NCBI GenBank assembly: GCA_965637545.1
Contig: OZ281499.1
Coordinates: 5,642,001-5,706,000 of the forward strand
Direction: 5' to 3'
Length of the DNA: 64,000 bases
Origin: Phallusia mammillata
Taxonomy: Eukaryota
Both the position numbers and the translations under genes were made by a program. Under the pieces are notes generated by a model. It was not told the DNA's origin. It searched no databases and saw only the letters and a list, made by a program, of their open reading frames with translations. Positions 28,144 to 38,416 of this stretch are shown here, one piece after another; the first letter of the stretch is position 1; each line of letters opens with the position of its first letter.

Positions 28144-30179
28144 TTTGGAAAACTCTTTTAAGAGTTTCAAAGTCTTGAAATTTCGCCAACAAGCGACTGT
28201 GTTTAAAACAGAAACACATTTTACCCTTGAGGGCTTCGTTAAATATTATATTGACAAAAATCAATTAATAGCTAAATAAACCGTAGACCAGTGTTCTCAA
28301 ACTTATATGGATTGCGTACCACCTGACAACTTTTTCTATCGCTGCGTACCACCTAAAGTTCTAAACGTTGTTTGAATGGAGAGACCAAGAAATAGGCCTA
28401 TTTTCTCAAGTTGGCTAGCATATTTTGCAATTTCAAAGAATATCCAAAACGAGTTTCGCCCAAAACAGGGCTGATCGGTTGGGTCAGTTGAGTTGTAATT
28501 TTAGATCGGACTTAAATTAGGAGGTATAGCAGAAAGCTACTCACGTACTACCTAACCATGTAGTTCCGGCGTACCACTGTGGTACTGATGTAGACAGATT
28601 AATTCCGAAACACTACTATTAAACGAGGTTATTTCTACACAGTTTTGCCAACGCAGATGTGACTTGTCTTTGTCTGCTGGAGAATATTTTGCTTCCTGCT
28701 GGTTACGAAGGAATATATTAACCTGAAAATTTACTTTCTAATGTGTGTTTTTAAGCACAAATAGTCTGCAACTAAACCTATTTGAAGTAAAGCTGTATGT
28801 CCGCACACTAAACAGTTGAAAACTAAACGTTGTAGTTGCCCCCAAGCAAAGTAAATGCCCCAAGCTAATTGTCTGTTCACCCAAATTTATGCATGTGAAA
28901 TCAAAGCGCTTTCGCAACTGTGAAACTGAACTCAAAGCTGTGCAACTAATACTGGTACAAAGTGCAGTTTGCTACGTTTATAATTGGATGTCTAGACTGT
29001 TTAGTAAATCATTAACATAATTGTTAGGTCAATTTTACGTCAAAAGTTCAACCGATATTTCTTATTGGACAAAACATTCTTAATGCGTTATAGTTTGCAA
29101 AACTGGCCTTTATAATCTTATATGGTTTATAAATTCGACTCTTTACAAAAATTGTGTGTGATAAGTTTTGGATGTGGGCTTGTGTGTGTTGAATCAATGG
29201 TAGCAACTACGTTACCATATAGCGCAGTACCTGTTAATTCATGTGTTAATGTTTAAGTGCAAATACAACTGACCGCAGCTTCCGAGAATAGACTGCTAAT
29301 ATATGTGCAACCACGTGTGTAGAATGCCCTAAAGCGTTCTTGCATAAACTGCGATAACTACACATTCTTGCCCAACCTTGCAGTACAACTGGGTCTAAGC
29401 CACACTTTTTTTGAAGCATTGGCATAGACTGGAACAGAGCTCTAAGCTTGTACGAAGTTTGTGCCCAAATCGTATGCTGCAAATCTGACACCTGGTCTAA
29501 ACCGAAATGATTCAAAATAATGCCCGAAAGTCAAGCTTGAACTTTTAGGCCCGAACCTGACCCACAATTTCGGACTGTAAAATGGCATAATAGCTTCTGT
29601 AGCTTTGAGTTTGGTTATTACAAATGTCCTATGTTAGATATCAAACTGACACTGTATAAACGGACCTAAACAATTTCTACTGCAGCCTATATTTTAAGAA
29701 TATTTGTTCAGTTATAAAGCTTCGGTGCAACCGTACGGACTTTCTTGCAAAGACACTTAGCACACAAGAAAGAAACGTTCTGCTCTGTCAGTTCGCTCAC
29801 ATTACGCATTGTTTCATAGCCTTGAAATATTTGAACGAACTCTTCGTGGCCCATCACGATGCAATTAATTAAATGATTCATGACATCAGCAAAAACACAT
29901 ACCGAATGCGAACTTATGATGCATGGTGGTTGAACATTTTTTAAAAACCACTGTGCACAAATATTTTGGGGTAAGAATTGGCGAGTATAACTTTCCCAAA
30001 CCAGTGCACAATGCCGCTTTCGCCCTAGCCTAGGTTATTCTAAATAAAGTGGTCTCTGTTCGGTCACAGATACCATATACATGTATGTAGTATCTATGGT
30101 TCGGTAGACAGAAAAACGATGACTTAAAGAGACACAAAAAATGACAAGATTTTAAACTTTTGGACTTTTAACGTATATA

Positions 30180-30668
30180 CAGGTTTGTCATCGACATGGA
30201 CCTCAAAATAAGGACAACCGAAAAAAAATTTCATACGAAAGGAAACAAAGGTTTTCGAAAGCAATTCACTTTCATAAAAATACTTCTCACGACAGCTCAG
30301 GTCTAGGTTTACTTTTCCCTGCAGCAGGGCTTTGACTGTCATTTCACTATTATCCCGTTTCCATGGCCGTTGGTCCGTTCGGACTTTTCCGCTATTTCAG
30401 TCCGATCGGACGCAATAAGGAATGACTCAGCATTTTTTTCAGCGTTTTCGCGGATCTCCTCGCGAGGAGGTCCGATCGGACTTTAAGACCAACGGCCATG
30501 GAAACGGGATATATGTTTGTTCCTTGTAATTGTTGAAAATAAGACAAAATAAGGACTTAGGTCAAAAAACAAGGACATTTCTTAGAAATAAGGACAATAA
30601 ATTTTACTAAGACATTGTTCTTCGAAATAGGGACAAATCTTGGAAATAGGGACGGCATGACAGCCCTG
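30180..30668 (-). mobile_element. hAT MITE, inverted copy of the 4012-4389 family, with a nested MITE
   Basis: Shares ctagacctgagctgtcgtgaga and the gtccttattt/aaataaggac repeats; perfect 8-bp TSD cgtatata (30172-30179, 30669-30676). Confidence 0.85.
30351..30511. mobile_element. MITE with 25-bp perfect TIRs (PIF/Harbinger-like or Tc1-like; superfamily uncertain)
   Basis: tatcccgtttccatggccgttggtc ... gaccaacggccatggaaacgggata, flanked by tat on both sides. Confidence 0.8.
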
Positions 30669-30932
30669 CGTATATAGCTATGGAAAAATATCATGGGTAT
30701 TGTAAAAAAATACAAAAAAAACTTATCACAAGGAACGAAAATATTTTGAGAAACACTGATTCGATCAAGCCCTTTACCATGATAGTCGGAGGCTGAGTCT
30801 CGGTGTTTGCATAGCGTGGTCGGGTCTTGGAACGTTGGGAGGTTTGGTAGTGGATAGTGAAAGGAAAAACTTGGACTTGGAGGTATTGGCTGTATGTGGA
30901 CAACTTTTCGAAACATTGATTTACGTTTTGAG

Positions 30933-30953
30933 ATGGGTTTTGATGTTAGCTGA
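30933..30953 (+). promoter_or_regulatory. MAGDIS-type regulatory uORF, MGFDVS*
   Basis: ATG GGT TTT GAT GTT AGC TGA, 147 nt upstream of the AMD1 ATG; hexapeptide with D4-V5-S6-stop. Confidence 0.8.
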
Positions 30954-31089
30954 TAGTGGGTGCTATTTTTCAAAACTTCGAACATTTTATTCTTTTGCAC
31001 TTTTTATCAACAAAAACACAACGTACAACGAAAAAAACCGTTACACATTGGTTGGATTCGTTAAATTCCACACCCCAAAATGGAGTTGA
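30943..31089 (+). promoter_or_regulatory. Second uORF (48 codons) overlapping the hexapeptide uORF and the AMD1 start codon
   Basis: ATG at 30943 lies inside uORF1; frame open to TGA 31087-31089, past the main ATG (31080) in another frame: MLADSGCYFSKLRTF...FHTPKWS*. Confidence 0.55.
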
Positions 31090-34000
31090 ATGGAAACTTC
31101 TTTGAAGGTGTCGAAAAGTTGCTTGAAATTTGGTTTTCGCAGTCCGAAGGAAGTTCTGGCTCAGGAGATGCCAGAAATGTTTCAAGGTATTTTTTAGAAC
31201 TTTTTTTAGAAACTGTGTCTCCAATTTCTATAATAATCTGAAACATTTATATTTTTAGATTAATTTGTAATACTATTTGCCTGAAATAAGGTTAACTTAC
31301 TCACTGTTGAACGTTGTATCGCAAAATACACTATGGTATGTCATTTATTTGCAGTTGCTTGCCCAGTGTACTTTATTTGCATGCAATAATGTATAGCCTT
31401 TGCAACTGCAAATATATATGATGATGTGTCATTGCCGATTTTTCACAAATGATTGATAAAGGCGAAAAATAATTGCACAACATTCTGTATATTTGAAGAG
31501 AGGTGTTATTTTGATGTTATGCATTTTACATTAAGTTTTTACAATCTGGAAAATTCGATAACCTAATCATTATTTCTTTCGTCAAAATTTAGATACACAT
31601 GGGAGACCATCCTTGACATAGTCCAGTGCAAAATACTTGATGAAATTCACGATGAAAGTCAAACTGCATATTTATTGAGGTGCCTGCTCTCAAGACTTTG
31701 CCAACTTACTATGGTTGTTTGTAATGCTATTTGTTTTCTATTAGTGAATCGAGTATGTTCGTGTCAAAGCGAAGAGTGATATTAAAAACTTGTGGCACAA
31801 CGTTATGCCTGCAGGCCCTGCCACATATCATAAAAGTTTTAAAGGATGAATGTGGCCTGGACACTGTAGCTGTAAGTAATTCAAACTTTTTTGTAAATGT
31901 GTTGTTTGTAGTTATTGCCTAATTTCCAGAATTACATAATGAACCTAAAAACATAAAAATATGACATTTTTTTAATTCCAACCTTGTTTCTGTGATAGAC
32001 AGATTTTAGTCACTTTCTGTTCACATAGATCATTTAATTGCATAGGAAAAGTAAATCTTAATCATATCATGTTGGAAAAATAGTTTTCATAATCGCATAG
32101 TCATCAGGTCAATTGCATAAAAAAGCTGGGCCATGGTTATGCAATTATCCAGTTTCTTTAAATATTATGTAAACATTTGTTATTTTTATCTAGGATTGTT
32201 TTTATTCACGAAAGAATTTTATGAAGCCTGACCACCAGCCACATCCCCACAAAACCTTTCAAGATGAAATTATTTACCTGAATCAGGTTTTGTCAGGTTA
32301 GAAATTGTTAAATCTATTAATAGCCTAAAATGATTTAAAAGTTAACTTTGCACTGCTTGTAAAATGCATTCAGCATGCAACCTAATATCACCTGATTCTA
32401 AACTGCAGATGTTTTAGTTAACTGCATATCCAACCTACCAATCTTTTCATGCAAATCACTAGAATAATGTTCCATAGGTATTGACCACAGGTTTGGAATT
32501 CATGTTCAATATCTAATTAACTGACGTTGTCTGTAAATGAAAAACATCACATAATCATTGGCCAATGTTTCTTTTGCATTTAGACCTTAGTTTTGTTTTG
32601 CTTATTTTTGTGAAAGAAATACATCAAGCAATTACTGCATTTTATTCTTGCTATTTTGCTATGCATTTTTTGTCACTTTTGCTTGCATAACTGATTGGTT
32701 TGGTTTTGTTTGTTCTTGTAGACAAACAACATGTGAATGAAAATCAAGTAAATGGGTTTTCCAATAACAAGCATCCAGGTATAAACAAAACAACAATTAT
32801 TTCCATTTTGTGTAGTTTTAAATGTTGTTTATGTGTTTTTTTTTCATGTCACAATGATCGGTAGCCTATTTTGATATTGTTTGCTAGTTAACATTTAGTT
32901 AAAATAAAATCATTCATTGGTGTTAATGCAGTGCATGCATAAAAAATCATCATCACCATGTTATGTGATGTAACTTGCATGAAATCAATGGTGATGTGCA
33001 TTTGGTAGGACTGGTTACAGCTAATAATAATACAAGCAATTTTTTATTCTGGCAAGATGTAATAAATGTATATATTGCTCTCAACAACATAATACTTTCA
33101 AGCATTTATTATTTCACTTTTTAGTAGTTGGCTGTTACTAGATTACATAAAAACTATTTTAATTGAGAAAACACTAATTGGGAACAAAATAGCCTTTAAA
33201 TTTATGTAAAAGTGCGCATTTTCTTCAAACATTTTAAGCAGCTTTATTGGCTATTTGTACTTTGTTATGGTATTGTTAGCTAAATACAGTAAACCTAGGT
33301 TAATCCTGATCTTCACCTAATTCAGAGAAAACTTAAAGTACAAATGATTTGTAAAACAGTAAAGCTTAAACTAATCGACATCAGTTTATCTGGATCTTCG
33401 CCTAATCCAGACAATTGTTTAATTGTTTTGGTCCAAATAAGCCCAAATTACTGGAGGTTTACCACATAGCTGTAATCAAATGAAAAATTAATATATAATG
33501 CCAACCTGCCTATGAGCTACCAGGCTTTTCATTAACATGTTTATCGTTAGCATATTTTCATGTAATATCAACAGGAAGCGCTTCATACTGTTTGGGGAGG
33601 ATTGATGGAGATTGTTGGTTTCTCTACACTTTAAATCATGTCGGCAACACAAATCTAATAGGAGTTGATGAACCTGACCAAACACTTGAGATACTTATGA
33701 CCGACTTGGATCGCACAGTGATGGACAAATTTGTGTTGTGCGATGAGAATGGAGATAAACATGATGATGATAAAATAACTGAGGTGAGACAAAATATATG
33801 TCACCGAAGAATTCTTCTACAACTGAGTTTAAAACATTTTTTACTAAACTTAAAAAAAACAATAATGAGGAAAATAACGACCTAAAAAGTGACATGCTTT
33901 ATTACTTAAATGACTTGCTCATGTCATCATCAGGTATATGAGGGGCCACATCAGTAACACCCGTTTATGACCGCCGACCTCACATAAAAGAATGATAAAA

Positions 34001-36384
34001 ATGGATCATTATTTACTCATTAAACTTATGAACATATCTGTGTAAAAAACTGAAATGTGAAAAACACTGTTTTTGATTAAATGTTGTGCATGCAAATAAG
34101 CATTTTTTATGTGATTTACACAAACTGTGACTGCACAAATACTTGAGTTAGTTTTAGGATGTGTGTGCACTGCAAGGCACTTTTCCACATACCTTCTGTC
34201 ACTTACTTATAAGCTTAAGGACCATTGTGATAGTTTTTCCTTTCATTATTTACTTTGTCAAGAAACTTGTCATTGGGCCTAACCATACCTAAAAATGAAC
34301 ACATAAATATTGTTTTAACAGATGACAGGAATCAAAGATATAATCCCTGATTCGAAGATCAGCGCCAAGCTGTTCGATCCGTGTGGTTACTCCATGAATG
34401 GATTACTGCCTGAGGTAACTAGATGTATTGGTGCAAGAAAACTATAATCAGTTTTGACTTGTTGTTTATCGTGGTGATGGTATTTAAGCAAAAATTACTT
34501 GGACATGTGGTTTGATACTAGTGCATCGGTTCTCAAACTGGGGTCTGCTGTCCTTTAGGGGTCCGTGAGGCAATTTTTTTTTTTGGGGGGGTGGGGGCGT
34601 GAAAAGGTTAAAGTAATTCTGTAATCTTATTTGGCGTAAGTTTGTGCCACTTAATAAGTTTTATTCAAAATAGAATTGAGAATTGACAGTCTCCATTGCT
34701 AAACAATAGCCTTTACTGCATGACAACTAACAAAAATGCAATTGTTCGCGCACAATTGTAATGTTTTTTTTGTCTTGTCTGTGATATCAGATGCTGTCTT
34801 TGGATCATAGTTATGCGCAATTTTACATAACTAGCTAAAATCAGTCAACTTTCATTGTCCTGAAATACAAATTTAGGCTTTAGGAAAAAGTTTGAGAACC
34901 ACTACTAGAGGATACCGAAGAGAATTTTGTTAGTACCATTGCTGTGCATATTGTGAAACGGGAATTGCAAATCCTCTACAGGAAATCAGTGACTTCAGGC
35001 TTCCTGTACAAACACATATGACTTTAACACAGTGTGCTTTGCATGCATCTCGTAGTTAGTTCAGTACATCCTAATGTTTTGTATGACAGGGCCAATATTG
35101 GACAATTCATATTACACCCGAGGAAGAGTTTTCATATGTCAGTTTCGAAACCAATTGGAAAACTGGAAGCTATGCTGGGATAATTGAAAAAGTAGTGAAA
35201 CTATTTAAACCTGGGAGATTTACAATGACCCTCTTTGCAAACAAGGTACACAAAAGTTTTATATTATGTTTTATTTGCACATCAAAATTGTACCATTCCA
35301 GTTTCAAACAATTTTTCACACAAAAAAATTATGTTGATTTTCCTGCTAACATTTAGCTTTAGAAAGAAATGAGTCCTTGATAAAAGGATAAAGACTCAAT
35401 TTTTTAATAAATTCAAATTTGTTTCTAAAAAACCCATGAAGTTTCATTAAAGAGGTATTGAAATGGGGTATTCCAAATTTATGGTTTGATCATAAATATA
35501 TCTTTGCTAAGAAAAGCAGTTCAACTACAAAACATAATGCCAATAGCCTGAAGCTATTGTGTGCAGCCTGAAGCTATTAGTTGCAAACAACAGTACTCAG
35601 GGATTGAATTACATTAACAGTGTAGCTCACATCACAAGCCAAAACAACATTACCAGCTGTCAGCAAATGTGTTTCTGATAACAGCTGTTTAGCCAACAAG
35701 CCCTATATTGCTTCAAGTGATAGGCAACAAAAGCCTTTCATGGTTTATACTAAACATTTTCAGGTTTTGTAACTATAATATTAGCAATTTTGAAGAGAAA
35801 TCCATTAGCATTGTAAAATCCTAAGTTATGTTGTTTTAGAATTTAGCACCTAAATATAAGGCACAACACATTTCACAACAATTAATAGTATAGTCCAACA
35901 ATCAGTTACATCTTGTTTGAGGATTTTATTACACATAATCATTTCCATATACATTTATGTTTGCAGCTACAATAAATAAAACCAATGTACAATTTTTTTT
36001 TTCAAAAACCAAACTGCAAATACCCAAAATGCTATGCATTGTTACTAAATCACCATGCATGATGTCATACCTCGGTGATTTCATATATACAGGAAGCCTG
36101 CTGTTTTGGTTTCATTCCATTGACCTAAATAGCTTTCACTAAGTTGGTATGGTCAAGCCAGAAAAAACAAAAACTTTCAAGCACAACATGTTTTCATGCT
36201 ACAGTTTAATTTTGAAGTAATATTTATGTTACAGAGTTCATCTCTTGATATATCTGACTGGTGTAAGCCTGGTGGTCCATATGTAGAAGGTTTTTGCCAT
36301 CAAGACATCCAGACAGCGCGTTTACAGGATTATGGATTGTTTTACACAAATTATGCCAAGAAACAAAATATGATTAAGCAATAG
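31080..36384 (+). CDS. AMD1: S-adenosylmethionine decarboxylase proenzyme
   Basis: [20 protein letters not shown]; [23 protein letters not shown] (pyruvoyl self-cleavage site ~31746-31751); [10 protein letters not shown]; [13 protein letters not shown]; [10 protein letters not shown]; [20 protein letters not shown]. Exons start at 31080, 31593, 31745, 32194, (32722), 33575, 34322, 35091 and 36235. Confidence 0.96.
34524..34904. mobile_element. Degenerate hAT MITE in an AMD1 intron
   Basis: catcggttctcaaactg ... aagtttgagaaccacta TIRs; no clean TSD. Confidence 0.55.
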
Positions 36385-38416
36385 TGTGGAATGTGTTAAA
36401 GCAATAAAGCTACTACCAAATTGTATAAAGTCATACAATTGTAACTGTACACCAAACATCCTACACAAATACTGCACCTCGAATATCTTTCAAATAATAA
36501 CTGCAAGTCACCTGTTTTTACCATTTAGAGAAGGCTGCTGAAATTAAAATGATGTTTTTGCACAACTTTTTGTATGGGTATTGTAAATTTCTAATTGTCC
36601 ATAGTGTACAGCTCTTTTGATCTCTTAAAAAAGTAAGTTTCACACACAAAAAAACTTGTTTCTGATGTAGGATGTGTAATATATGTTTGCATTGTGTATT
36701 GTACATATGTATTAATGTGTATTGTTTTATAATGTACAGTTTATGTACATTAAACCCTTGCAGAATTACTCAAGAAGCCAACTCAGACCAGTTAGTCCAT
36801 TAGTTCCAAGTACTTTATGGCTCTGGTCCAACTTGTACAGAGCTATTCGTTTTTTCGTGTTGTTTTACCTTTATTTAATAGCTAGCTTCTGTTAAGTGTT
36901 TTTCGAAACCGGTCATCAAAATTTATTTATTCAAATTTGTGTATAAATATGGAAGAAGATTTGAGTGTAAATAAACAGTGTTTGTTGTAATCAAACTTGT
37001 TCATTTCTGATGGAGAAATGGGATGGGATATTTTCAGTAAGAGTTTATTAATTTCAGAATTTGGTATTCTTGTACAGCAAAGGTCGGCAACCTAAGCGAC
37101 TGGTGCCAATTTGCATGTTATTTCCATGTGGTAATGACTACGCGTGCCAACATTGTTCTGAGTTATAGTGGTTTGTGTCAGCTGATATCAATTTTAAGGA
37201 GAGAGCAGAGCGTTTAGTGCACGTAGACTGGATTTTAAGAGAATGGCATGATAAGAAACTAAAAACAAGCCGTGTAACATGTTAAATTTGTAGTTTACTA
37301 TGAACAGACAAATCGTTTGGCGGGTCAACAAAAATCACCTCCTTTTTTACTGAGAGAAATAAACTTGACTTAATAACACACAAAGTTAGCAACGTTAAAA
37401 CTATACACTGAGTCGAAGCACGATCAATTTGAGCGCACATCTTTCTAAATTCTGTCGGTCGAGAGAAGGGTCGGATCAAGTAGTTTATCTCCCTTAAAGC
37501 GGGTAAGAGTATGCTGACCTACACGTTACAATGGCGGTTTGTGACGTAAAAGTGAATGCCTGGCGAACGAAGCGTGGAATTATTGTTGCAAGATTAGATT
37601 TACACTTGAAAAAGACAACACAGTGAAAAAACGACTTTTACATTATTATACCACTACAAATTTGGCCGTGAAAAGTGTCTATGGTGGCTCCCTGCTTTTC
37701 TTAATTAGCACATGGTTAGTACTTTGGCTTATGGTTAATTCATTCCCAATCGCGAAAGCTATTGAAAATACCAACTATACGCTCTTCAAATATGGTTGTA
37801 AGATGTTTTTGAGCGCTCTGGCCAAAAGGCCGCTAGGTCGCGGCAACGGTGAATATATCCCTTATTTTCAATGACTGTAATGTATTTGGCAAAAATTAAC
37901 AAGTTAAACTATAAGGTAAAACGTCTTTAAAAGTTTTAGTTGGACCATTAGTTGCACAGTGACACACTTCTCTGATGCGGCTGTCCAAGTGCTGACTCTG
38001 TTACGTCACAAGTGTTAGTGAGTCAAGATAAGGATGATGCTGTACAGATGAAGACATCGTAAACATTGCAAAGGCCTTGCAGTAGGATTTTAGACTTCTG
38101 TGTTATGGCTTGCAACTTACAGGTTGACAATTTAGTCTTGGATAATGGTTTCAGATCACAATCAAGAAAGTCGGAGTAATAAGGCAGTATATTGTAAAAA
38201 GCCTAGTTATTTAGAATTGCATTGTTTAGATCTAATTGCAGTGAAGAAAAATAGCTTTATAATGCTGCAGTTTCAATAAATATTCCGCAAAGAAGCTAGA
38301 CATTTTGGCATCATTTACTTTTTTCAATTGAATGAAAAAGCGATTATTTCTTACAGAATGCAATCTTCTTTTTAATCTTGAAAAAATTGGCGACCCAGAA
38401 ATTGCCAACAGTGAAT

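What the first reader, a model, noticed from the sequence alone, without database searches (positions are those of the whole stretch)
30933..30953. MGFDVS*: invertebrate counterpart of the polyamine-sensing MAGDIS arrest peptide
Seen: a 6-codon uORF ending D-V-S-stop in the AMD1 leader. Known: mammalian AMD1 is repressed by the MAGDIS uORF through polyamine-dependent stalling at termination. Asp4 is essential, position 5 needs Ile or a close homolog such as Val, the stop must follow residue 6, and positions 2-3 are tolerant. This peptide fits each rule. Inference: the feedback mechanism predates vertebrates. It may already appear in uORF surveys, which I cannot check.
Basis: partly seen in the sequence, partly recalled or inferred. 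Interest (0 to 1): 0.72.

Follow-up and report, generated by a model that had tools for sequence, protein, structure and literature searches.

The report
Sea squirt AMD1 MAGDIS-like uORF
A six-codon mini-reading-frame (MGFDVS) sits in the transcribed leader of the polyamine-synthesis gene AMD1 of the sea squirt Phallusia mammillata and is kept in two other sea squirts, so it is very probably the tunicate version of the vertebrate MAGDIS polyamine sensor, a link that a 2010 review already hinted at.

Summary
ATG GGT TTT GAT GTT AGC TGA (MGFDVS-stop) lies at 30933-30953, 126 nt upstream of the AMD1 start at 31080. The window is from the ascidian Phallusia mammillata: its spliced AMD1 product matches that species' deposited protein at 360 of 362 residues. 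Spliced RNA contigs from four studies run unbroken through the uORF into the coding exons. One contig carries a template-switch oligo at 30795, so the uORF lies in the mature mRNA about 138 nt from the cap.

The same hexapeptide uORF is present in Ciona intestinalis (MGFDVS) and Clavelina lepadiformis (MCFDVS). In both it is the only conserved island in an otherwise unalignable leader, and two of its three variable sites are synonymous. About 5e-5 such uORFs are expected by chance per leader. A skate transcript shows the vertebrate MAGDIS form.

The uORF is absent from Styela clava and three related transcripts, and from 8 kb of genomic DNA upstream of the amphioxus gene. It is therefore a feature of some tunicates, not of invertebrates in general.

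Polyamine-dependent stalling is inferred, not shown. Ivanov, Atkins and Michael (2010) already grouped a sea-squirt AdoMetDC uORF with the vertebrate one. I rate this a new member of a known kind, of modest interest.

The parts
30795..31186 (+). AMD1 exon 1: 285-nt 5' leader plus the first 107 coding nt. The 5' end is taken from the template-switch-oligo junction; other contigs start at 30775, 30823 and 30609.
   Evidence: contig pieces, loose end AAGAGACAGGTATCAACGCAGAGTACGGG before 30795, GT..AG joint 31186/31593
30933..30953 (+). Hexapeptide uORF MGFDVS-stop; AUG in strong context (G at -3, G at +4); UGA stop.
   Evidence: conserved in Ciona (L014 5891-5911) and Clavelina (L002 5921-5941)
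30894..30953 (+). Alternative 19-codon form of the same uORF from an in-frame upstream AUG in weak context (U at -3, U at +4); same C-terminus and stop. It has no counterpart in Ciona or Clavelina.
30943..31089 (+). 48-codon out-of-frame uORF that starts inside the hexapeptide uORF (the AUG is made by the Asp-Val codons GAT GTN) and overlaps the main AUG. Weak context; its length is not conserved (AUG-stop in Ciona, 13 codons in Clavelina), so it is probably a by-product.
30954..31079 (+). 126-nt AUG-free spacer between the uORF stop and the AMD1 AUG, with room for reinitiation. The spacers in Ciona (89 nt) and Clavelina (59 nt) are also AUG-free.
   Evidence: joint chance of three AUG-free spacers about 0.03
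31080..36384 (+). AMD1 coding region in 9 exons: 31080-31186, 31593-31679, 31745-31871, 32194-32296, 32722-32778, 33575-33783, 34322-34414, 35090-35245, 36235-36384.
   Evidence: the five joints within 29900-33900 confirmed as GT..AG; the three downstream splice sites are read from the sequence; 360/362 identity to P0128

Best explanation
The 21-nt uORF is a conserved, peptide-specific translational brake on AMD1 in enterogonan ascidians (Phallusia, Ciona, Clavelina), and is the tunicate counterpart of the vertebrate MAGDIS uORF. Proposed mechanism, inferred by analogy: most scanning 43S complexes start at the strong-context uORF AUG, about 138 nt from the cap. At low polyamine levels the six-codon uORF terminates quickly, and 40S subunits resume scanning through an AUG-free spacer of 126 nt and reinitiate at the AMD1 AUG. 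At high spermidine or spermine levels the nascent ...Asp-Val-Ser peptidyl-tRNA with UGA in the A site delays termination, and the stalled ribosome blocks following scanning subunits and prevents reinitiation, which lowers AMD1 synthesis. Shown here: the sequence, its presence in the mature mRNA, peptide-level conservation in three ascidian lineages, and a match to the residues that mammalian mutagenesis found essential. Inferred: that the uORF is translated, that it stalls, that it responds to polyamines, and that it shares descent with MAGDIS.
For: The sequence and contexts are. RNA contigs from four studies span cap-side sequence, the uORF and the spliced CDS. Ciona has MGFDVS-stop 89 nt before its AMD1 AUG, and Clavelina has MCFDVS-stop 59 nt before its AUG. 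In the three-species leader alignment the uORF window has 18/21 invariant columns against a median of 4/21. Two of its three variable sites are synonymous third positions, and the Val codon is GTT, GTG or GTC. Chance expectation is about 5e-5 per leader. Skate transcripts carry MAGDIS-stop as the only uAUG. Literature: D4R relieves suppression by 87% and removing Ser6 abolishes it (PMC2761275). I5L abolishes stalling, long N-terminal extensions are tolerated, and stalling works even on plant ribosomes (PMC7038982). No Rfam match approached a gathering score (best E-values 0.23 and 0.88), and the leader folds no better than shuffles (z = -0.06), which argues against an RNA-structure explanation.
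Against: There is no functional, Ribo-seq or toeprint evidence for any tunicate. The uORF is far from the cap, unlike in mammals, so the cap-occlusion part of the mammalian model cannot apply. It was not found in Styela clava or in three transcripts that group with Styela, so it is dispensable in some tunicates. Val at position 5 is accepted only on my recollection of Mize et al. 1998; the closest change I could read about, I5L, kills activity. Contigs cannot exclude a minor trans-spliced or alternatively started mRNA that lacks the uORF. The shared motif is only three residues plus a stop, so convergence with vertebrates cannot be excluded.
Confidence: 0.68

Rival explanations
1. The uORF is a conserved but generic brake. 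It lowers AMD1 translation simply by capturing scanning ribosomes, or its peptide matters for some reason other than polyamine sensing, with no polyamine-dependent termination stall.
For: Strong AUG context and short length are enough for constitutive attenuation. The cap-proximal arrangement of mammals is missing. The Styela-clade sequences manage without it.
Against: A generic uORF would not keep an identical x-F-D-V-S peptide with synonymous codon drift while everything around it diverges. The conserved residues are exactly those required for the mammalian stall.
Confidence: 0.2
2. The element works as in the best explanation but arose independently. The ascidian D-V-S-stop and vertebrate D-I-S-stop hexapeptides would then be separate solutions to the same problem, not a shared inheritance from the common ancestor of tunicates and vertebrates.
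For: The shared motif is only three residues plus a stop. It is absent from the Styela clade. Two putative pelagic tunicate lineages have different short uORFs, MALTVI-stop and M-[D/E]-V-I-stop. Positions 2-3, the stop codon (TGA versus TAG) and the distance to the cap all differ. PMC2811004 says AdoMetDC uORFs emerged at least three separate times.
Against: The two share the host gene, a length of exactly six codons, the residues at positions 4-6 and the AGC serine codon, and the lineages are sister groups. A single origin with loss in some tunicates needs fewer events.
Confidence: 0.1
3. Chance ORF with no function.
For: Short ORFs are common in AT-rich leaders. The degenerate 21-mer occurs 59 times, in 58 stretches, in the metagenome collection, never next to AMD1.
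Against: About 5e-5 are expected per leader, yet it is found within 130 nt upstream of the AMD1 AUG in three separately diverged ascidian genomes as the sole conserved island.
Confidence: 0.02

Closest known systems
Vertebrate AMD1/AdoMetDC uORF encoding MAGDIS (polyamine-dependent termination stall; Hill & Morris 1993, Ruan 1996, Mize 1998, Law 2001, Raney 2002, as cited in PMC2811004 and PMC2075485)
   Same: Same host gene. Exactly six codons. Asp4, a beta-branched aliphatic residue at position 5, Ser6 encoded by AGC, and a stop directly after residue 6. AUG with G at +4. AUG-free leader downstream of the uORF (skate L016 and the ascidians).
   Different: Gly-Phe or Cys-Phe at positions 2-3 instead of Ala-Gly. 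Val instead of Ile at position 5. UGA instead of UAG. About 138 nt from the cap instead of 14 nt. Spacer to the main AUG of 59-126 nt instead of about 270-300 nt. Phallusia also has a possible 19-codon N-terminally extended form. No functional data.
Sea-squirt AdoMetDC uORF mentioned by Ivanov, Atkins & Michael 2010 (PMC2811004)
   Same: Almost certainly the same element. [quoted passage not shown] The Ciona intestinalis uORF I found is MGFDVS, identical to the Phallusia peptide.
   Different: The review's supplementary figure is not held, so I could not confirm which species or peptide it lists. Phallusia and Clavelina, and the RNA evidence, are added here.
Other metazoan, fungal, plant and algal AdoMetDC uORFs (e.g. 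the plant 48-55-codon 'small uORF' with its 'tiny uORF')
   Same: uORFs in the AdoMetDC leader; the plant small uORF is experimentally shown to be sequence-dependent and polyamine-responsive (PMC2811004).
   Different: Those uORFs have a penultimate proline (per PMC2811004), and the plant small uORF is far longer (48-55 codons). The plant one depends on the exit-tunnel constriction (uL4), whereas MAGDIS does not (PMC7038982). No sequence similarity to MGFDVS.

Membership tests
MAGDIS-type AMD1 arrest-peptide uORF | Lies in the 5' leader of the mature AMD1/AdoMetDC mRNA, upstream of and separate from the main ORF | tested here: met
   Spliced RNA contigs from four studies cover 30795 or earlier through 31184 and continue into the CDS exons. 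The uORF ends 126 nt before the AUG.
MAGDIS-type AMD1 arrest-peptide uORF | Six codons with the stop directly after residue 6 | tested here: met
   30933-30953. The same holds in Ciona and Clavelina. Caveat: Phallusia alone also has an in-frame weak-context AUG that gives a 19-codon form. N-terminal extension is tolerated by MAGDIS (PMC7038982).
MAGDIS-type AMD1 arrest-peptide uORF | Asp at position 4 | tested here: met
   GAT at 30942-30944, invariant in the three ascidians. D4R relieves suppression by 87% in mammals (PMC2761275).
MAGDIS-type AMD1 arrest-peptide uORF | Ile, or functionally equivalent Val, at position 5 | tested here: inconclusive
   Val in all three ascidians, with GTT/GTG/GTC synonymous drift. 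I5L abolishes stalling (PMC7038982). That Val is tolerated rests on my recollection of Mize et al. 1998, which is not held.
MAGDIS-type AMD1 arrest-peptide uORF | Ser at position 6 | tested here: met
   AGC in all three ascidians and in skate. MAGDI without Ser6 does not suppress (PMC2761275).
MAGDIS-type AMD1 arrest-peptide uORF | Peptide-level conservation among related species | tested here: met
   18/21 invariant columns against a median of 4/21 in the leader alignment; two of three variable sites are synonymous. Not met in the Styela clade.
MAGDIS-type AMD1 arrest-peptide uORF | Cap-proximal uORF AUG (14 nt in mammals), which underlies cell-type-specific recognition and occlusion of 43S loading | tested here: not met
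   The template-switch-oligo junction at 30795 puts the AUG about 138 nt from the 5' end, and other contigs start at or upstream of 30823. In the skate contig the uORF AUG is at nt 3.
MAGDIS-type AMD1 arrest-peptide uORF | Polyamine-dependent ribosome stalling at the termination codon that represses the main ORF | not testable with these tools
   Needs reporter, toeprint or Ribo-seq experiments.

The most novel reading that the evidence does not exclude
The D-[I/V]-S-stop hexapeptide is an arrest module inherited from the common ancestor of tunicates and vertebrates. The ascidian version, with Phe3 and Val5 and about 140 nt from the cap, would show that cap proximity is not needed, so the module works by blocking scanning and reinitiation rather than 43S loading. 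The lineages without it (Styela clade) or with variants ending T-V-I or D/E-V-I (putative pelagic tunicates) would then record loss or drift of the sensor and extend the known sequence rules.
Probability: 0.45. Interest if true: 0.5.

Novelty: new member of a known kind. Interest (0 to 1): 0.33.

Why it matters
MAGDIS is the shortest known eukaryotic arrest peptide, and none of the papers I could read reports a structure of the MAGDIS-stalled ribosome. A natural variant kept across several ascidian lineages (x-F-D-V-S-stop), placed far from the cap, gives an evolutionary mutagenesis data point. It supports D-[I/V]-S-stop as the core motif, suggests that position 3 can be constrained, and separates the stalling function from cap proximity. 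It would also date polyamine feedback on AMD1 translation to before the tunicate-vertebrate split. The value is limited because the sea-squirt case was already flagged in 2010 and nothing here shows function.

Tried and rejected
1. A dinucleotide-shuffle test with 200,000 shuffles per leader timed out. I replaced it with a first-order Markov simulation.
2. The search for the degenerate 21-mer ATGNNNTTTGATGTNAGCTGA in metagenome contigs gave 59 matches in 58 stretches. None is followed by an AMD1 motif within 600 nt, and many are simply the ends of longer open frames. This is background and yielded no new tunicate leaders.
3. Rfam gave nothing near a gathering score, and the leader folds no better than shuffles (z = -0.06), so I rejected an RNA-element explanation.
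4. Mize et al. 1998 (JBC 273:32500) is not held, and the supplement of PMC2811004 is not held. I therefore could not check the Val5 rule or the exact sea-squirt peptide listed in 2010.
5. The Ciona savignyi protein P0131 has no gene on record.
6. Two literature searches were too loose and returned irrelevant papers.
7. In Styela clava, 6 kb upstream on the coding strand has no D-[I/V]-S-stop at all. The transcript leaders L004, L005 and L009/L010 also lack it.
8. The amphioxus 8 kb upstream region has one D-I-S-stop with no in-frame AUG. Without transcripts I could not define the amphioxus leader or check for the penultimate-proline uORF reported for other metazoa.
9. My first gene model missed a 57-nt exon, which the read joints corrected.

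Full report
**Observation.** The window reads ATG GGT TTT GAT GTT AGC TGA at 30933-30953 on the + strand, which is M-G-F-D-V-S-stop. The AUG context is gagAUGG, with purine at -3 and G at +4, so it is strong. The next long ORF starts at 31080 (aaaAUGG) and begins [19 protein letters not shown]. Further on it contains the [10 protein letters not shown] proenzyme cleavage region typical of S-adenosylmethionine decarboxylase.

**Gene and organism.** I assembled the coding exons from splice signals and then corrected the model with read joints, which added a 57-nt exon at 32722-32778. The nine-exon product has 362 residues. It matches P0128, the deposited Phallusia mammillata S-adenosylmethionine decarboxylase proenzyme (CAB3221391.1, Pfam PF01536), at 360 of 362 positions. 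The protein identity confirms that independently.

**Is the uORF in the mature mRNA?**
- Logan contigs of four runs from four studies carry GT..AG joints at the five exon borders inside the laid stretch (29900-33900), so they derive from RNA.
- All four run without a break through exon 1: X1 30609-31184, X2 30775-31184, X4 30795-31184 and X20 30823-31145.
- The X4 contig has, directly before 30795, the loose end AAGAGACAGGTATCAACGCAGAGTACGGG. I read this as a Nextera end plus a SMART template-switch oligo, a reading from my own knowledge of library chemistry. It marks a cDNA 5' end, which is the cap site, at about 30795.
- No joint and no loose end was reported between 30953 and 31080, so I see no intron and no trans-splice acceptor that would remove the uORF.
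- Contigs cannot exclude minor isoforms.
- With a cap site near 30795, the leader is 285 nt long and the uORF AUG is about 138 nt from the cap.

**Other upstream AUGs in the leader.**
- 30894 is in frame with the uORF but in poor context (U at -3, U at +4). It would give MWTTFRNIDLRFEMGFDVS-stop.
- 30933 is the hexapeptide start.
- 30943 is out of frame and in poor context. It opens a 48-codon ORF that overlaps the main AUG.
- The 30943 AUG is an automatic by-product of the Asp-Val codons GAT GTN. Its ORF length is not conserved: it is AUG-stop in Ciona and 13 codons in Clavelina.
- The 30894 AUG has no counterpart in Ciona or Clavelina.
- The 126-nt spacer between the uORF stop and the AMD1 AUG has no AUG.

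**Chance.** A first-order Markov simulation with each leader's composition gives about 2-3e-7 strict matches per nucleotide. A strict match is AUG, two sense codons, Asp, Ile or Val, Ser, then stop. That is about 5e-5 per 285-nt leader and about 0.03 for the whole window on both strands. A degenerate version of the 21-mer occurs 59 times, in 58 stretches, in the metagenome collection. None of these is followed by an AMD1 motif, which is the expected random background.

**Conservation.**
- I found tunicate AMD1 proteins with an exon-5 query and then a full-length relative. I then fetched their loci.
- Ciona intestinalis has ATG GGC TTT GAT GTG AGC TGA (MGFDVS-stop), 89 nt before its AMD1 AUG (L014 5891-5911).
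- Clavelina lepadiformis has ATG TGT TTT GAT GTC AGC TGA (MCFDVS-stop), 59 nt before its AUG, in two assemblies (L002 and L003).
- In a three-species alignment of the leaders, the uORF window has 18 of 21 invariant columns. The median for 21-column windows is 4.
- The three variable sites are the third position of codon 2 (synonymous between Phallusia and Ciona), the first position of codon 2 (Gly to Cys in Clavelina), and the third position of the Val codon, which is T, G or C and always synonymous.
- That pattern points to selection on the peptide rather than on an RNA motif. In agreement, Rfam finds nothing near a gathering score and the leader folds no better than shuffled sequence (z = -0.06).
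- All three spacers are AUG-free, with a joint chance of about 0.03. This suits reinitiation after a very short uORF.

**Limits of the conservation.**
- An AMD1 protein tree puts all eleven tunicate sequences in one clade with 100/99 support.
- Styela clava groups with three unnamed transcript contigs (L005, L009/L010 and L004). I take this to be the stolidobranch group; only Styela is named.
- Styela has no D-[I/V]-S-stop anywhere in 6 kb upstream on the coding strand. The transcript leaders in that clade lack it too.
- A marine metagenome lineage (L007 and L008) has MTLIRMEVI-stop or MTLIKMDVI-stop.
- A marine JGI-sample lineage that is sister to the other tunicates (L011-L013) has a six-codon MALTVI-stop in strong context.
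- I do not know which species these two lineages are, and under the mammalian rules a Thr4 peptide would be inactive.
- Amphioxus has no such uORF in 8 kb of genomic upstream sequence, but I could not define its leader.
- The element is therefore shown for Phallusia, Ciona and Clavelina. By my knowledge of ascidian classification these are phlebobranch and aplousobranch (enterogonan) ascidians. It is not shown for invertebrates in general.

**The vertebrate state, checked with tools.** Transcript contigs that encode the Leucoraja erinacea (skate) AMD1 protein carry ATG GCC GGC GAC ATT AGC TAG (MAGDIS-stop) at nt 3-23 of the contig. It is the only upstream AUG in a 292-nt leader.

**Comparison with the known rules.**
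- From papers I could read: D4R relieves MAGDIS suppression by 87%, and MAGDI without Ser6 does not suppress (PMC2761275).
- I5L abolishes spermidine-dependent stalling (PMC7038982).
- MAGDIS still stalls when it carries an N-terminal tag and linker of more than 75 residues, and it stalls even in an Arabidopsis extract. It does not depend on the uL4 tunnel constriction (PMC7038982).
- The stall is at the termination codon and responds to polyamines (PMC2811004; PMC13025110).
- The ascidian peptide keeps Asp4, Ser6 and the immediate stop.
- Its Val5 is the one position I could not check against a held paper. Acceptance of Val rests on my recollection of Mize et al. 1998, which is not held.
- Tolerance of N-terminal extension means that the 19-codon Phallusia form should behave like the hexapeptide.
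- Because MAGDIS works on ribosomes as distant as a plant's, an ascidian ribosome should respond as well.

**Mechanism proposed (inferred).** Most scanning subunits initiate at the strong uORF AUG. At low polyamine levels termination is fast, and 40S subunits reinitiate at the AMD1 AUG after the AUG-free spacer. At high polyamine levels the ...Asp-Val-Ser-tRNA complex with UGA in the A site terminates slowly. The stalled ribosome then blocks following subunits and prevents reinitiation, so AMD1 synthesis falls. The uORF is about 138 nt from the cap, so the occlusion of 43S loading proposed for the mammalian uORF 14 nt from the cap (PMC2811004) cannot be the mode here. This is the main anatomical difference from the mammalian case.

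**Novelty.** Ivanov, Atkins and Michael (2010) state that AdoMetDC uORFs occur in diverse metazoa. [quoted passage not shown] The supplementary figure is not held, but Ciona's uORF is MGFDVS, so this is almost certainly the element they saw. In the held library I found no other paper that links AMD1 uORFs with tunicates, and no functional test. The Phallusia uORF is therefore a new member of a known kind.

**Verdict.**
The element is real, conserved and MAGDIS-like. Function is untested, it is restricted to part of the tunicates, and it was already anticipated in the literature.
- Confidence that it is a peptide-dependent, polyamine-responsive brake on AMD1 is about 0.68.
- Interest is modest, at 0.33.

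Noticed in passing
window 32722-32778: A 57-nt (19-codon) exon, [19 protein letters not shown], is spliced into AMD1 in all four RNA runs. The other tunicate AMD1 proteins I compared (340-351 aa) appear to lack this insert, which lies just before the conserved YC[LM]GR segment.
   Followed up: partly
window 30285-30650: Just upstream of the AMD1 leader, many RNA contigs match at only 90-95% identity, with varied joints and loose ends. This looks like a dispersed, transcribed repeat. It may explain why the X1 contig extends to 30609.
   Followed up: no
window 36382-36399: An in-frame stop lies four codons after the AMD1 stop codon (*CGMC*), so Phallusia has no counterpart of the vertebrate 384-nt read-through C-tail arrest ORF. 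In the skate contig L016, a 115-codon ORF (1322-1669) follows the AMD1 stop closely and is probably that C-tail.
   Followed up: partly
L011-L013 (uORF at -93) and L007/L008 (uORF at -140/-125): Unidentified tunicate-clade AMD1 contigs from marine JGI samples and marine metagenomes carry other short uORFs: six-codon MALTVI-stop in strong context, and MTLIKMDVI-stop or MTLIRMEVI-stop. They share a Val at the penultimate position, followed by Ile instead of Ser.
   Followed up: partly
L001 1-1796 (Styela clava, upstream of AMD1): The called gene next to Styela AMD1 has a Pfam hit to PF00606, herpesvirus Glycoprotein B. This is possibly an endogenous herpes-like element.
   Followed up: no
window 31784 and 33757: A>G differences in run X2 lie in the codons of residues 98 and 269, the two positions where the window's product differs from the deposited P. 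mammillata protein (K98E, I269V). They are probably allelic polymorphisms.
   Followed up: partly
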